64,000 nucleotides of DNA. Origin: Camelus dromedarius. Lineage: Eukaryota. A model generated the notes under the pieces. It had not been told where the DNA came from. It saw nothing but the letters and a program-made list of their open reading frames with translations, and did not search any database. The DNA lies in the NCBI RefSeq assembly GCF_036321535.1, contig NC_087444.1, forward strand, positions 79,670,001-79,734,000, written 5' to 3'. The position numbers and the translations under genes were made by a program. Of the stretch, positions 57,601-64,000 are shown one piece after another (the stretch's first letter is position 1; each line of letters begins with the position of its first letter).

Positions 57601-60600
57601 TGTTTTTCAAGATTATTTTGGCTACTTGGTGTCCTTGAGATTCCATATGAATTTTAGGATGAATTTTTCCATATCTGCAGAAGACGCCTTTGTAATTTTG
57701 ATAGCAGTTGTGTTGAGTCTGTAGATGACTCGGATAGTGTTGACATCTTCACAGTGTTAAGTCTTCCAATCCGTGAGCATAAAAGTCTTTCCATTTATTG
57801 TCTGTAATTTTTTGGACCAATGTTTTGTAGTTTTTAGTGTACAAGCCTTACTTCCTTGGTTAAGTTTATTTCTACATATTTTAGTCTTTAGATAGATACT
57901 TTTATTTTTTATTTTTTAATTTAATTTTGTTGATTTATTTATTTCTCTGGGTTTTTTGGGGGGGAGGGAGGTAATTAGGTTTGTTTGTTTGTTTATGGAG
58001 GAGGTACTGGGGTTTGAACCCAGGACCTCAAGCATGCTAAACGTGCACTCTGCCATTTGAGGTATACCCCTGACCCTAGATAGATACTTTACAAGTGGAA
58101 TTGTTTTCCTAGTTTCCTGTTCGGATTGTTCATTGTTAGTGTACAGAAATATAACTGCTTTTTTTCATTTTATGTCTGTATCCCCTTCCTTTGCTGAGTT
58201 CTTTTATTCTAACAGTTTTGTGGTGGAATCTTTAAGATTTCTTGAGCTGTGATAATCCTATTTCCTTCTCTATTGGATGCCTTTTATTTCTCTTTCTTGC
58301 CTAATTGCTCTTTCTAGAATTTCCAGTACTGTATTGAAGAGTAGTGGTGGAAACTGGTATCCTTTTCTTATTCCTGATCGTAGTGGAATAGTTTTCATTC
58401 TTTCACCATCAAGTGTGATATTTGCCCTACGCTTTAAATTTTTTACTTTTATTATGGAAGGCTGGTTTCCTTCAGTTCATAGTTTGTTGAGTATTTCCAT
58501 GATGAAAGGGTTTTAAACTTTTTTGGATGGTTTTATCGCACTGATTGAGGTGATAGATTTTTCCCTTTTGTTGTTAATGCGACATGTTATATAGATCAAA
58601 TTTTGTGTGTTGAACAATCCTGGCATTTTAGAAATAAATGCTAGCTTTTCATTTTGTATAATTTTTTCACTGTGTTGCTAAATAGAGTTTGCTGGTATTT
58701 TCTCAATTCCTTTAGCCCCAGTAATCATCAGTTCTGTTGGTCTGTAGGTTTCTTCTCTTGTAGTGTCTTTGTCTGTGTTTGATGTCATGGTAGTGGTGAA
58801 AGCTGCAGTTGACCAAAATTAAAGCAACTTGGCGTTGCAAAGTAGTCACATCAGATAGATGCTACCAGTGCAGTTGTCGTCCAGGTAGGAAACACCTGCT
58901 TTTACTACTCTGCCATCTTCCCTCTAGCCGCGCCCACAGGTACCTAGTATTTCAAAGTATCTTTCTGGTGGTCTGTTGTGTGCTGAGTTGTCTGGGCGAG
59001 TATTGTGACTTGTCCTGTCCTTCCCTTAGGTTTGGATCATCCTGATCTCCTGCAGCTCCCCAGCTGGGGCTACAGGAAGAGTCCCCTGTGCTTCCCAGGA
59101 TGGACATGACTCCATTCTGAACCAGATGGGCCCAGAGGGGACCTGACCCAGATGCATGGCAGCTGGGGGAGGCCGTGAATTCAGGGTTTGGTTGAAATGT
59201 ATCAGGAACCTGTCCTGTTTTACTTGGGTTTCAGTGCTGCCACACCAGTGGCCCCACCTCACCTCTACCTTCCCTTCTCCATTCTTTGACACTTTGCTGA
59301 CTTGTCATTTCTATCGTCATTTTATGGCTCTTCCGGGTGAGAGCTACTCCCCATCTCTGCACTGCTTATCTCACTCACTCCTCAGCTCTTCCCTCCTCAG
59401 TGCTATCCCAGTTTGTTGTGTCCTGCGGTGTACATGCATCTAATAATCCTTGAACACGTGTTGACCATTTTTCAGTCAGATTTTTCTGGGCCTGAAGTAG
59501 ACTTCTCCATAGCATCACATGTCACCAGCAGATACAATCCTGCTGCGAGTCACGGACAGAAGAATGAGCTGTAGAACGTGCCTTTCCCTCTCGGCCCCAC
59601 CCTGTCCTAGTGTCCTGTGCCTGGTGAGGCCTGCACCTTTCTGTGACCTTAGGGACCCAGTGGTGCACACCAGCTGCTTCCTCAAGCTGAAGGAACTTCC
59701 CCAACTCTTTCCCTGAAAACGGGTTCATGGACTGATTGTTTCACGTGCCAGATTACACGTGTGGTGGTTTTGCTCCCTCGCAGTGGACTGAACTTGTACT
59801 TCACCGTCACTTCTCTGCTTTCAGGTTGTTGGCATGGAGTGCGAGATAAGGAAGCACCTTCTGAACAGACCGTTTCTGTAGAAGGAGTGTCACAGATCAG
59901 GACTGTCAAGGCAGGTTCATCTCCCCAGAAGGCCCAGCCCTTTGAGATGTGTGGCCCAGTCCTGAGAGAGATTTTGCACTTGCCTGAGCACCAGGGAACA
60001 CATCTTGGGCAGAAACCGTACACGTGCGGGAGTCAACTTTATTTCACTGCCAACCTTCAACAGCACCAGGGGCAGCACATTAGAAGGATACCCTACAGAA
60101 GTTCTGTGGCTGGAGCCTTGTTTGTAGAGAGCTGCACGACCCGTGTGTCAGGGAAATCCTCTTCCTGTGGGGAGATTGGGAAGGACTTCTTAGCCAGCAT
60201 GGGCTTTCTCCATCAACCGGCCACTCTCAGTGAGAAGGCAAACAGCGGTGATGCCTGTGAGGGTGTCTTTCACAGCGGAAGAACGCATCAGAACTGGGGA
60301 GGAGGCAAGAAAGCCGTCACCTGCACCGGCACGCTTGTTGACCAGAGAGCCCTCACTGCAGAAGGGCTTTATGAGTGCAGCAGGTGTGGAAAAGCCTGCA
60401 CCCGGAGATGTAACCTCATTCAGCACCAGAAAGTCCACACAGGAGAAAGGCCTTATGACTGCAATGAATGTGGGAAGTCCTTTACCTACCTCTCGAGCTT
60501 TATTATACATCAGAGAGTCCACACTGGAGAAGGGCCTTATAAATATAGGGAATGTGGAATATCTTTTAGTCCAAGATCCAAATTCATTCAATATCAGAGA

Positions 60601-61504: not shown

Positions 61505-64000
61505 TCCAGGTATGTGAGAATCTTTCAGGAGTTGTGTTACACCTTCTTACCTGCCCAGAACCCTTGACAGATTTATGTCACTGCCAGTTCTTTGGCAGAA
61601 TTCATTTCACCTCTATCACCTGGCAGGTCCACACAGTGTGCAAAAGTTAGGTCCCAACATTCTCAGGGTGCTGACTTCTGTCCCATCCCCATTTGCAGGG
61701 GGAAATAAGAGTGGTCTCAGGCCGTGTGGGGTCCTCATTCCTGTCTCATTTCCAGGTTAGGGCATGGACTGGCTCATTTTAGGTCCAGTGGACCTGATCT
61801 GAATTCTGTTGGTGATTTTCCAGGAAGGACTGCATTTTCAAGGATATGTCAGTTTCTGGGGACACTTATCTTGAATTTTCCCAGCCTCCAGGTCACCAAC
61901 TGCATGCCTCATGTTTGTTTGCATTTTGTAATAATAAAGGCACTAATGTTTAAGCCACCTCTGACCTTCAGGTTCTGTTCCTGGGTGGTGAGCTGAAAAC
62001 AGCTGGGCTCTACCAGCATTAGGGACTGCACAGCTTTCACGGGGTCCTGTGTGGTGTGCCTCAGACACGTCAGGGTGATTGAAGAATGTAGGTCTCTTTC
62101 TGGCTTTAGCCCCGAGTACATTGTTGCCCAGGGTCTCCTAGGAAGGACTGCCGAGTTTTGTGGTCCTCATTTGTGGACTTGGTGTCAGGGTTCTTTGTGA
62201 GCTCAGTGAACACCCTGAGGAGCCAGGAAGTTGTGACACCCTCCCGTGCTTCTGGGAACAAAATGGATTGTTTTTCTTGGTCACGGTGAGTATCACGTAA
62301 TGCTCAGCAGTTGCCCTGCAAAAGAACCACATGCCCTGATCCCCAGTCCCCAGAATTCACTAGATAGTGCCACTGAAAGACTGAAGGGCCAAGGGGGAGC
62401 ATGCTGGTAAAGTGCCACTGGAGCAGAGGAGATGGCGGGGAAGTAGGTGGGGTGCCCCTGCTCACACTGCATCCACAGATGCTCCAGTGAGTGTGACTGT
62501 GCAGTATCAGTGTGCACAGATGCACAGAAATCCTCAGGACCTCCAGGCATGTGTGTCTTTTGTGGCTGAGGTCATTGTCAGAGAAAATACGCTATTGCTT
62601 TTGTGGATTCCTGTAGTCTCTCTGGAATGTTCAGGAAAGGCCATTGCTAAGCAGGCAGAGAAACTAGCATAGAGAGAAAGGAGATGCCTTTGTTCACATT
62701 GTGGCTTTGTCACCAGCCAGCATTCCTGCTAACTCAGGGGGAAGGGATCCATTCCTCATCAGTATTTGCTACCACTAAGGCAAGGGTGCTTCTCCAAGGT
62801 CATTAGAAAAGAGAAGCAAGAAAAAAAAGAAAGAATACACACACACACACACACACACAAATATTTGAATTACTCTGCTGTACACCAGAAACTAATGCAG
62901 CATTGTAAATCAACTATAGTTCAATTTTTTAAAAAAAGAAAAGAGGCAGTAAAGGATTGCCAGACCTGATTTTCTGAAGAGTGGGAGATCTAAATTTTTC
63001 TTTCAGACTATTTTGTAGATTATTATTCCAGTAGAGTTGATGTGCAGTATATTAGAAGTGTACAATTTAAATTTTACACCCATGTAAACCCACAAAACCT
63101 TCTCATAATCACAATCATGGACATGTCTCGCCCTCGCAGTTTACCTCAGGCCCTTCCTCTCCCCAGGCTTCCAGGCCATCAATTATTTACCTTCATTTAT
63201 AGGGAATTATTTTGTATTTTCTAGAATTTTATATGATTTTTTTCATAAAATATTTACTTCCGTTTTTTTTTTCTGGTTTCACTTATGGTTCATAATTATT
63301 TTGAGATTCTTCAATGATCCTTATATAAGTAGTCGATTCTTTTTATTGCTGAGTAGTATCTTTTCTATACTTATACCATTCATTTATCCATTTCTCTGGT
63401 TATAAGAATTTGGGTTACTTCCAGTTTTGGCTACTATAAAGGTGCTAGAACATTTGTGTATATTTCTATGTGTACATATGTAATTTCACTTGTGTTAGTA
63501 ACTCGGAGTATAATGCCTGAGTCATAGAATAGGTGAGTGTTTAACCTACAGAACTGCCAAACTGTGACCTAAAAATCAACGTTTGTTTTTACAGACCTTG
63601 CCGGGAGTATGTAAAATGCTTCCACGTACCTGCTAACACTTGGTATGATCAGTCTTTTGAATTTACCCTTTTAGTAAGGAAACAGTTTTAGTTGCATTTC
63701 CTTAAGAATTCATGATATTGAGCATTTTTTTTCATGCGTTTGCCATCTGTATATTTTCTTGGTAAAATGTCTTCATATCTTTTGCCTATTTTTTTATGTG
63801 GTGGCTATTTCCCATTTCATTAAGAAGTAATCAGCTCATTTTTGTTCCTCATTTTTTTTGTGTTATATACAGTGTAATTAGCACAGATGTCATATACTCA
63901 TAAATTTAATCTGCATTAAGTGTAGACTTCCAGTAATACAGTGAAGTCCTGGTTTGTAGTGTTCTCTAATTTTCCTGATATAAGTACTCTCACTGTGGCC
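61505..64000. repeat. Outer right arm of the inverted duplication, running off the window end
   Basis: Homologous to the reverse complement of 43240-45700. Confidence 0.85.
62836..62858. repeat. (CA)n microsatellite
   Basis: tacacacacacacacacacacaca; the homologous site in the left arm (44380-44420) is an interrupted TA/CA tract. Confidence 0.85.

What the first reader, a model, noticed from the sequence alone, without database searches (positions are those of the whole stretch)
60532..61505. Homogenisation stops exactly at the linker after finger 2; the DNA-recognition array is a divergent island
Seen: identity ends at 60532/46583 in the TGE|(R/G)P linker after finger 2 and resumes at ~61505/45700 in the 3' region. 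Residues at -1,2,3,6 in gene D: RCNQ, YSSI, QYSS, QSNQ, QFSY, RSSH, QSSS, HSNN, CSNK, QSTQ. In gene E: RCNQ, YSSI, [degenerate], RSTH, QSSS, CSNI, CSNN, QSVQ, RFSY. E has lost some fingers, duplicated the SCKSNL finger and reordered others, and its island is ~91 bp longer. Inference: either selection removes conversion tracts that erase the new specificity, or the indels block strand invasion. This would be a way to evolve new specificity on a fixed regulatory and effector chassis.
Basis: partly seen in the sequence, partly recalled or inferred. Interest (0 to 1): 0.8.

Follow-up and report, generated by a model that had tools for sequence, protein, structure and literature searches.

The report
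Finger array escapes palindrome gene conversion
Two head-to-head zinc-finger repressor genes in a camel genome have been copied onto each other until almost identical, except for the stretch that encodes their DNA-reading fingers, which has stayed different since before camels and deer separated.

Summary
Genes D (minus strand, the ZNF211 orthologue) and E (plus strand) form a palindrome about 20 kb long around a 426-bp spacer. The arms differ at 3 of 6461 compared bases from 53771 to 60531. Identity then falls to 77% for 979 bp in E and 888 bp in D, starting in the linker after finger 2. It returns to 99.5% for 1.15 kb, then drops to 79%.

What is new here is that E's array is old, not recently scrambled. 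Reindeer and another deer carry a gene with the same finger order, the same degenerate finger 3 and nearly the same contact residues (dN/dS 0.12). Trees group the flanks by lineage and the array by paralogue, each with 100% bootstrap support. The deer D and E genes show the same mosaic.

Camel E carries D's fingers 1–2, so the boundary lies inside the array, not at its edge. RNA runs hold both islands.

Best reading: repeated arm-to-arm gene conversion stops where the finger units are no longer colinear, and purifying selection on both arrays reinforces this.

Unchecked notes from this scan describe similar conversion that spares specificity regions elsewhere in this genome (AOC3/AOC4, OR10K, a TAAR palindrome).

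The parts
53345..53770 (.). Unique AT-rich spacer at the centre of the palindrome
   Evidence: Mirror identity ends at 53344/53771. The spacer is flanked by CpG-rich blocks at 52500-52999 and 54000-54499, with GC 0.70-0.73 and CpG observed/expected 0.93-0.99.
53771..60531 (+). E arm, inner homogenised tract: promoter CpG island, KRAB-A exon, introns, spacer part of the ZNF exon and fingers 1-2
   Evidence: 3 mismatches in 6461 non-N bases against the D arm, with no gaps.
46584..53344 (-). D arm, inner homogenised tract (mirror of 53771-60531)
   Evidence: The part from 46584 to 47223 is 98.6% identical to alpaca ZNF211.
55669..55797 (+). KRAB-A exon of E (the mirror copy in D is at 51318-51446, minus strand)
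   Evidence: Pfam KRAB PF01352, 81 bits, E = 4e-23. Found by motif scan.
59825..61122 (+). ZNF exon coding part of gene E, up to the stop codon TGA at 61120-61122
   Evidence: Translation. Seven C2H2 stretches pass the threshold in Pfam.
45903..47290 (-). ZNF exon coding part of gene D (ZNF211 orthologue), ten fingers at 46745-45906, stop codon at 45905-45903
   Evidence: The array from finger 3 to the stop is 95.5% identical in protein to muntjac ZNF211, 93% to pig and ferret, and 89% to apes.
60532..61510 (+). E island. Linker change at 60532; degenerate finger E3 at 60538-60621; fingers E4-E9 at 60622-61125; relic E10x at 61126-61207; out-of-frame finger E11 at 61208-61291; decayed tail to 61510
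   Evidence: 76.7% identical to the D island. Colinear with the deer E-type gene in one 3.3-kb alignment. dN/dS is 0.12 for E4-E9 and 0.74 for E3.
45696..46583 (-). D island: fingers D3-D10 and a decayed tail
   Evidence: 99.1% identical to alpaca D and 89.4% to muntjac D. dN/dS is 0.05.
61511..62662 (+). E arm, outer homogenised tract in the 3' UTR and downstream, including an AATAAA at 61933-61938
   Evidence: 5 substitutions and 1 indel against D 44545-45695. Camel D and E group together to the exclusion of alpaca D, bootstrap 99%.
44545..45695 (-). D arm, outer homogenised tract
62663..63893 (+). Outer flank of the E arm: colinear with D 44544-43358 but only about 79% identical
   Evidence: An indel of about 38 bp sits at the boundary.

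Best explanation
D and E are old inverted paralogues. D is the conserved ZNF211 orthologue. E is a ZNF211-like gene whose array arose from the ZNF211 array by loss, doubling and reordering of whole finger units before camels and ruminants split.

In the camel lineage the two genes lie head to head around a 426-bp spacer. Non-allelic, arm-to-arm gene conversion has repeatedly overwritten one arm with the other. Two separate tracts are visible:
- A very recent tract runs from the centre through the promoter, KRAB exon, introns, spacer and fingers 1-2.
- A somewhat older tract lies in the 3' region.

Each tract ends where the arms stop being colinear: at a finger-unit rearrangement breakpoint in a linker, or at indels. 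Inside the island the longest exact match between the arms is 38 bp, with shifts of register. That leaves no substrate for homologous repair, so the island stays out by default. Purifying selection on both arrays would also remove any tract that did enter.

The result is two DNA-reading modules kept for tens of millions of years on a regulatory and KRAB part that is repeatedly made uniform.

Shown: the geometry, the identity profile, the age and conservation of E's array, the tree conflict between segments, and the presence of both islands in RNA runs. Inferred: the repair mechanism, the D-to-E direction, and that the structural block rather than selection sets the boundaries.
For: - Identity profile with four sharp boundaries.
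- The two tracts differ in age, Fisher p = 0.0007.
- The non-coding outer flank (79%) and the island (77%) are similarly diverged.
- Reindeer protein P0290 and deer contig L001 carry the same E-type finger order, degenerate finger 3, decayed finger 10 and contact residues.
- Synonymous divergence of E between camel and deer (0.35) equals that of D between camel and muntjac (0.37). D-E partner fingers reach 0.52.
- ML trees: the 5' flank and 3' tract group by lineage, the island groups by paralogue, all at 100%. Camel D and E exclude alpaca D at 99%.
- Within-lineage and cross-lineage identities of partner fingers are alike, so there is no micro-conversion inside the island. The longest exact match is 38 bp.
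- About 219 bp of the island is non-coding in both genes.
- Finger 2 of camel E is D-type, while deer E has a D3-like second finger.
- Reindeer E against muntjac D shows the same mosaic: KRAB region up to 98.7%, array 73-77%.
- E's island is present at 0.95-0.96 of words in 14 runs from 8 studies, and at 0.67-0.77 in 6 RNA runs.
Against: - No reads could be laid, so the perfect identity of the arms, the centre junction and the splicing of E transcripts are unverified. Assembly polishing could inflate the arm identity.
- Alpaca E could not be fetched, so the timing of the 5' tract rests on D alone.
- Muntjac and reindeer show no inverted partner within 10 kb. The palindrome may be specific to camelids, or the deer arrangement may be derived.
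- Selection and structural block predict almost the same pattern and are not cleanly separated.
- A few runs hold D's island but little of E's, which hints that E may be dispensable or polymorphic.
Confidence: 0.75

Rival explanations
1. Selection alone. Conversion tracts enter the array as freely as they enter the flanks, and they are removed only because they destroy E's or D's binding specificity.
For: Both arrays are under strong purifying selection: dN/dS 0.12 for E4-E9 and 0.05 for D3-D10, with 23 of 24 and 31 of 32 contact residues unchanged. The island has persisted in two lineages.
Against: About 219 bp of the island (61292-61510) is non-coding in both genes and is still only about 74% identical. 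The outer flank, which has no role in specificity, is also unconverted. Fingers 1-2 of E were overwritten without loss of the gene. No partial tracts are seen inside the island, and there is no exact match longer than 38 bp to start one.
Confidence: 0.12
2. Recent inverted duplication of D, after which the new copy received its array from an older E-type gene elsewhere. On this reading the island is the converted part and the flanks are simply young.
For: The 5' tract is almost perfectly identical. Deer genomes show no palindrome within 10 kb, so the head-to-head layout could be young.
Against: The outer flanks are colinear in inverted orientation at 79% for at least 1.2 kb, which implies an old inverted pair at this site. 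The two identical tracts differ in age, p = 0.0007. A donor E copy is needed and none is known. The island's non-coding tail is as diverged as the outer flank.
Confidence: 0.07
3. Assembly artefact. The arms are two haplotypes or a collapsed and polished repeat wrongly joined as a palindrome, and the island is an allelic structural variant.
For: 6.5 kb without a single difference is what repeat-aware polishing can produce. No reads could be laid. A few runs lack E's island words.
Against: The D and E arrays are separate, annotated genes in deer. The alpaca D arm is colinear at 97%, and the deer E gene is colinear with the E arm across both island boundaries. Both islands are present in many independent runs, and both in the same RNA runs. 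The outer flanks differ by 21%.
Confidence: 0.04

Closest known systems
Sex-chromosome palindromes kept identical by arm-to-arm gene conversion (primate Y P1-P8; primate and mouse X palindromes; PMC8327919, PMC8600007, bioRxiv 10.1101/800185)
   Same: Inverted arms around a short unique spacer. Arm identity is above 99.9% over kilobases. Arms group by species rather than by arm. Genes are carried in the arms.
   Different: This palindrome is small, with arms of about 10 kb. Its chromosome is unknown. The two arms carry different genes. A 0.9-kb stretch inside the arms has stayed about 23% diverged since before the camel-ruminant split. Known palindromes are described as uniformly identical along their arms.
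Mosaic interlocus gene conversion that spares specificity-determining parts of duplicated genes (for example primate red/green opsins, and gamma-globin tracts ending at a simple repeat; from my own knowledge, not checked here)
   Same: Flanks and introns are homogenised while the stretch that sets specificity keeps its paralogue identity. Tract ends coincide with sequence features.
   Different: Here the spared part is a tandem array of 84-bp units. Its own unit rearrangements both create the new specificity and break colinearity. The partners are arranged as a palindrome.
KRAB zinc-finger paralogue evolution by finger gain, loss and short gene conversions (Emerson and Thomas 2009, PMC2604467; Kauzlaric et al. 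2017, PMC5363842)
   Same: Paralogues differ in finger number and order. Short conversions among paralogues were detected with GENECONV. The array is the part that diverges.
   Different: In the passages I searched, those papers treat conversion as a nuisance or as a means of duplication. They do not mention a near-identical gene body with an old array island. Here contact residues show conservation, not positive selection.

Membership tests
KRAB zinc-finger protein genes (KZFP) | An N-terminal KRAB box | tested here: met
   Pfam PF01352, 81 bits against a cut-off of 20.4, on window 55669-55797. The D copy is identical by mirror.
KRAB zinc-finger protein genes (KZFP) | A tandem array of C2H2 fingers joined by TGEKP-type linkers, encoded in one large 3' exon | tested here: met
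   D has 10 fingers in 84-bp units. E has 8 canonical fingers plus 1 degenerate one. zf-C2H2 and zf-H2C2_2 score far above their cut-offs.
ZNF211 orthologue (gene D) | Array orthology and conserved neighbourhood with genes named ZNF211 in other mammals | tested here: met
   The array from finger 3 to the stop is 95.5% identical to muntjac ZNF211, 93% to pig and ferret, and 89% to apes. Contact residues are identical to muntjac's except for one. The locus is colinear with the muntjac and alpaca loci.
ZNF211 orthologue (gene E) | The same array orthology | tested here: not met
   E's island is 68-78% identical to ZNF211 proteins but 85.6% to the deer E-type protein. It groups with deer E at 100% bootstrap. 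E is a separate ZNF211-like paralogue.
Palindrome maintained by arm-to-arm gene conversion | Inverted arms above 99% identical around a short spacer | tested here: met
   99.95% over 6.76 kb and 99.5% over 1.15 kb, with a 426-bp spacer. This comes from the assembly only, with no read support.
Palindrome maintained by arm-to-arm gene conversion | Concerted evolution: arms closer to each other than to the orthologous arm of a related species | tested here: met
   In the 3' tract, camel D and E exclude alpaca D (99%). The 5' flank and 3' tract group by lineage against deer D and E (100%). Alpaca E was not available.
Palindrome maintained by arm-to-arm gene conversion | Uniform identity along the arms | tested here: not met
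   The 979/888-bp island is 76.7% identical, and the outer flank 79%.
Mosaic gene conversion sparing a specificity region | Conflicting trees: flanks group by species, spared region groups by paralogue | tested here: met
   100% bootstrap on both sides. The deer pair shows the same dip in identity.
Mosaic gene conversion sparing a specificity region | The spared region is functional and under selection in both copies | tested here: met
   dN/dS is 0.12 for E and 0.05 for D. RNA runs hold both islands. DNA binding itself was not tested.

The most novel reading that the evidence does not exclude
Rearrangement of whole finger units makes a KZFP array insulate itself. The same unequal exchange that creates a new DNA-reading module also breaks colinearity, so later gene conversion cannot cross it. 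Two specificities can then coexist for more than 60 million years on a promoter and KRAB part that is continually re-homogenised. This is seen here in two separate lineages (camel and deer). It may be a general route by which KZFP paralogues keep a common regulation while reading different targets.
Probability: 0.4. Interest if true: 0.7.

Novelty: new variant of a known kind. Interest (0 to 1): 0.58.

Why it matters
[quoted passage not shown] How their paralogues gain and keep separate targets is usually described only as duplication followed by divergence. This locus shows a cleaner case. The regulatory and effector parts of two genes are kept uniform by conversion, while the two reading modules remain distinct and conserved across artiodactyls.

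It provides a natural pair in which only fingers 3 onward differ, which suits a direct comparison of binding. It also gives datable conversion tracts whose ends can be tied to structural breaks. That makes the question of whether selection or structural heterology limits conversion testable with camelid population data.

Tried and rejected
There is therefore no read-level check of junctions, splicing, the stop codon or polymorphism.
- The two island-restricted protein searches ranked long poly-finger proteins first and hid close relatives. The whole-exon search found the E-type protein.
- Camelus bactrianus protein P0281 is not on record as a gene product, so no second camel locus was obtained.
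- Alpaca E could not be reached. Only alpaca D lay within the flank of the neighbouring gene.
- Two exact-pattern scans of metagenome contigs for the E6/E7 finger found nothing.
- The muntjac D and reindeer E loci have no inverted partner within 10 kb. An old shared palindrome in ruminants is therefore not supported.
- Recent micro-conversion inside the island: rejected, because partner-finger identities are the same within and across lineages.
- Positive selection at contact residues: not seen, at 1/24 changed against 15/143 elsewhere (p = 0.47), and 5/24 against 19/143 between paralogues (p = 0.35).
- E as a decaying pseudogene because of its stop codon and degenerate finger: rejected. Both the degenerate finger 3 and the decayed finger 10 are shared with the intact deer gene.
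- Five literature searches found no description of a palindromic KZFP pair with an array island.
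Full report
**Layout of the window.** A self-comparison of the window and a KRAB motif scan show five KRAB zinc-finger genes. The last two are D on the minus strand (KRAB-A at about 51440, ZNF exon 47290-45903) and E on the plus strand (KRAB-A at 55669-55797, ZNF exon from 59825). They lie head to head. Their arms mirror each other about a 426-bp AT-rich spacer (53345-53770), which sits between two CpG-rich blocks. 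Pfam confirms the KRAB box and the C2H2 arrays.

**Checking the observation.** I compared each E position p with D position 107115-p, without gaps.
- From 53771 to 60531 there are 3 mismatches in 6461 non-N bases, and none after 54048.
- The first difference on the array side is at 60532/46583, in the TGE(G/R)P linker after finger 2. Dense divergence starts nine bases later.
- Identity resumes at 61511/45695 and continues to 62662/44545 with 5 substitutions and 1 indel in 1152 bp.
- Beyond that the arms remain colinear to the end of the window but are only 79% identical.
- The island is 979 bp in E and 888 bp in D, a difference of 91 bp.

The two near-identical tracts differ in age (Fisher p = 0.0007), so at least two conversion events are needed.

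**Anatomy of the two arrays.** D has ten canonical fingers. E has the following:
- fingers 1-2, identical to D's;
- a degenerate third finger that lacks one Cys and both His;
- six good fingers, E4 to E9;
- a TGA in the next linker (61120-61122);
- a frameshifted finger relic, and then an intact finger outside the reading frame.

Comparing the 84-bp units pairs E4 with D6 (93%), E5 with D7 (87%), E6 and E7 with D9 (86% and 82%), E8 with D4 (82%), E9 with D5 (87%) and E11 with D10 (87%).

**What D and E are.** The D array from finger 3 to the stop is 95.5% identical in protein to muntjac ZNF211, 93% to pig and ferret, and 89% to apes. The non-finger spacer is only 55-65% identical. D is the ZNF211 orthologue and has a strongly conserved array.

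The whole-exon search with E found an ENA metagenome protein (P0226) with an E-type array. Its 90% cluster contains an annotated reindeer protein, P0290. The reindeer locus L004 encodes a full KRAB-plus-finger gene, and the metagenome contig L001 is 96.6% identical to it.

The deer gene has the same layout as camel E:
- finger 1, a second finger, and the same degenerate third finger;
- then fingers with contact residues RSTH, QSSS, CSNI, CSNN, QSIQ and RFSY;
- then the same cysteine-less relic of finger 10.

The camel E arm aligns with the deer gene in a single colinear 3.3-kb segment that crosses both island boundaries. The D arm needs a shift of register to align. E's rearrangements, its degenerate finger and its truncated end are therefore old shared features. 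They are not recent decay.

**Selection.**

| Comparison | dN/dS | dS |
|---|---|---|
| E4-E9, camel vs deer | 0.12 | 0.35 |
| D3-D10, camel vs muntjac | 0.05 | 0.37 |
| E3 (degenerate finger), camel vs deer | 0.74 | 0.36 |
| D-E partner fingers within camel | 0.15 | 0.52 |

The D-E partner dS of 0.52 is about 1.4 times the orthologue value, so the duplication predates the camel-ruminant split. Contact residues changed at 1 of 24 positions in E and 1 of 32 in D, no more than other positions. There is no sign of positive selection. The difference in specificity comes mainly from which fingers are present and in what order.

**Concerted evolution.** The window is colinear with an alpaca locus at 97% identity from 28001 to 47223, so it comes from an Old World camel or a close relative. 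Segment identities are in the table below.

| Segment | Camel D vs camel E | Camel D vs alpaca D |
|---|---|---|
| 5' tract | 100% | 98.6% |
| Island | 76.7% | 99.1% |
| 3' tract | 99.6% | 97.8% |
| Outer flank | 79% | 97% |

Maximum-likelihood trees with 200 bootstraps give the following:
- The 5' flank groups (camel D, camel E) against (muntjac D, deer E), at 100%.
- The 3' tract does the same, and places alpaca D outside camel D plus E, at 99%.
- The concatenated partner fingers group (camel E, deer E) against (camel D, alpaca D, muntjac D), at 100%.

Flanks that follow lineage and an island that follows paralogue are the signature of gene conversion with an excluded region. Reindeer E against muntjac D shows the same mosaic: up to 98.7% around the KRAB exon, 81-88% in the spacer, 73-77% in the array and 81-88% downstream. 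The pattern has therefore arisen in two lineages.

**Where the tract ends, and why.** In every ZNF211 orthologue examined, finger 2 has the YLSSFII-type helix. Deer E instead has a D3-like second finger, 82-83% identical in DNA to D3 and 67-71% to D2. Camel E carries D's finger 2.

The simplest account is that a D-to-E tract replaced the first two finger positions of E and ended in the linker. All fingers share 20-38 bp of identity there. So the boundary is not the edge of the recognition array. It is the first point where the two arrays cease to be colinear.

The other boundaries also coincide with indels:
- Gaps of up to 15 bp lie just inside the 3' boundary.
- An indel of about 38 bp sits at 62662.
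- The unique spacer lies at the centre.

Inside the island the longest exact D/E match is 38 bp. Partner-finger identities are the same within and across lineages, so no small tracts have entered in either lineage. The last 219 bp or so of the island is non-coding in both genes and is still only about 74% identical. Selection on specificity cannot explain that part.

I conclude that structural heterology sets the boundaries and keeps the island out. Purifying selection on both arrays acts as a second barrier. That mammalian homologous repair needs on the order of 200 bp of near-perfect identity comes from my own knowledge and was not tested here.

**Is it real, and is E used?** E's island words are present at 0.95-0.96 in 14 runs of the same organism from 8 studies. 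They are present at 0.67-0.77 in six RNA runs. D's island is at 0.93-0.98 in DNA runs and 0.80-0.82 in RNA runs. Three RNA runs hold both islands. Together with the alpaca and deer colinearity, this excludes an allelic or chimeric artefact for the two arms.

The exact 100% arm identity, the centre junction and the splicing of E transcripts therefore remain unverified.

A few runs hold D's island but little of E's: X22 at 0.97 against 0.10, X21 at 0.79 against 0.20, and sample S22 at 0.96 against 0.00. This could be a segregating loss or replacement of E's island, and I could not follow it up.

**Comparison with what is known.** Arm-to-arm conversion in palindromes is well described for sex chromosomes (PMC8327919, PMC8600007, bioRxiv 10.1101/800185). 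Short conversions and finger gain or loss among poly-ZF paralogues are also known (PMC2604467; PMC5363842). Five literature searches found no account of a palindromic KZFP pair with an old array island. It is a new variant of known processes, not a new kind of system.

Earlier unchecked notes from this scan describe the same palindrome (s1-198324). They also describe similar conversion that spares specificity regions at other loci of this genome.

1. The second specificity is ancient, not new.
2. The tract has entered the array by two fingers.
3. The boundaries are better explained by loss of colinearity than by selection alone.

Noticed in passing
window 5023-7136 vs 10269-8201: Genes A (KRAB at 5544, minus strand) and B (KRAB at 9744, plus strand) are also head to head, with mirrored promoter and KRAB regions, but these are only 78-83% identical. 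They look like an unhomogenised counterpart of the D/E palindrome. A 780-bp direct repeat at 92% links the B and C promoter regions (8195-8974 and 30070-30849).
   Followed up: no
window 60532-61510, in runs X22, X21, X23 and X24 against X31: Some runs of the same organism hold D's island almost completely but hold little or none of E's island. This may be a segregating deletion or a D-type replacement of E's array, a mislabelled relative, or incomplete contigs.
   Followed up: partly
L003:26110-26193 (minus strand), alpaca ZNF211 finger 2: The alpaca assembly reads FIIRQRVH where camel and all other ZNF211 proteins read FIIHQRVH. The first zinc-binding His of finger 2 would be Arg in alpaca. 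This rests on a single assembly and is unverified.
   Followed up: no
L004:10889-11188 vs L002:12444-12743: Reindeer E-type gene and muntjac ZNF211 are 98.7% identical over 300 bp near the KRAB exon, against 71-78% in the promoter and array. This points to a recent D/E conversion tract in deer.
   Followed up: partly
window 50133-50288, 50569-50712 and 56403-56546, 56827-56982: The four N runs sit at exactly mirrored positions in the two arms. This is expected if the same sequence was masked in both copies.
   Followed up: yes
window 60529-60537: The only difference in E's otherwise D-identical finger 2 unit turns the linker TGERP into TGEGP. Deer E has TGEKP here, so this may be a new change in camel E at the tract end.
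   Followed up: partly
L002 1-9500 and L004 1-8600: Upstream of the ZNF211 promoter in muntjac, and of the E-type promoter in reindeer, there is no inverted partner and no homology to the camel window. The head-to-head palindrome may be specific to camelids.
   Followed up: partly
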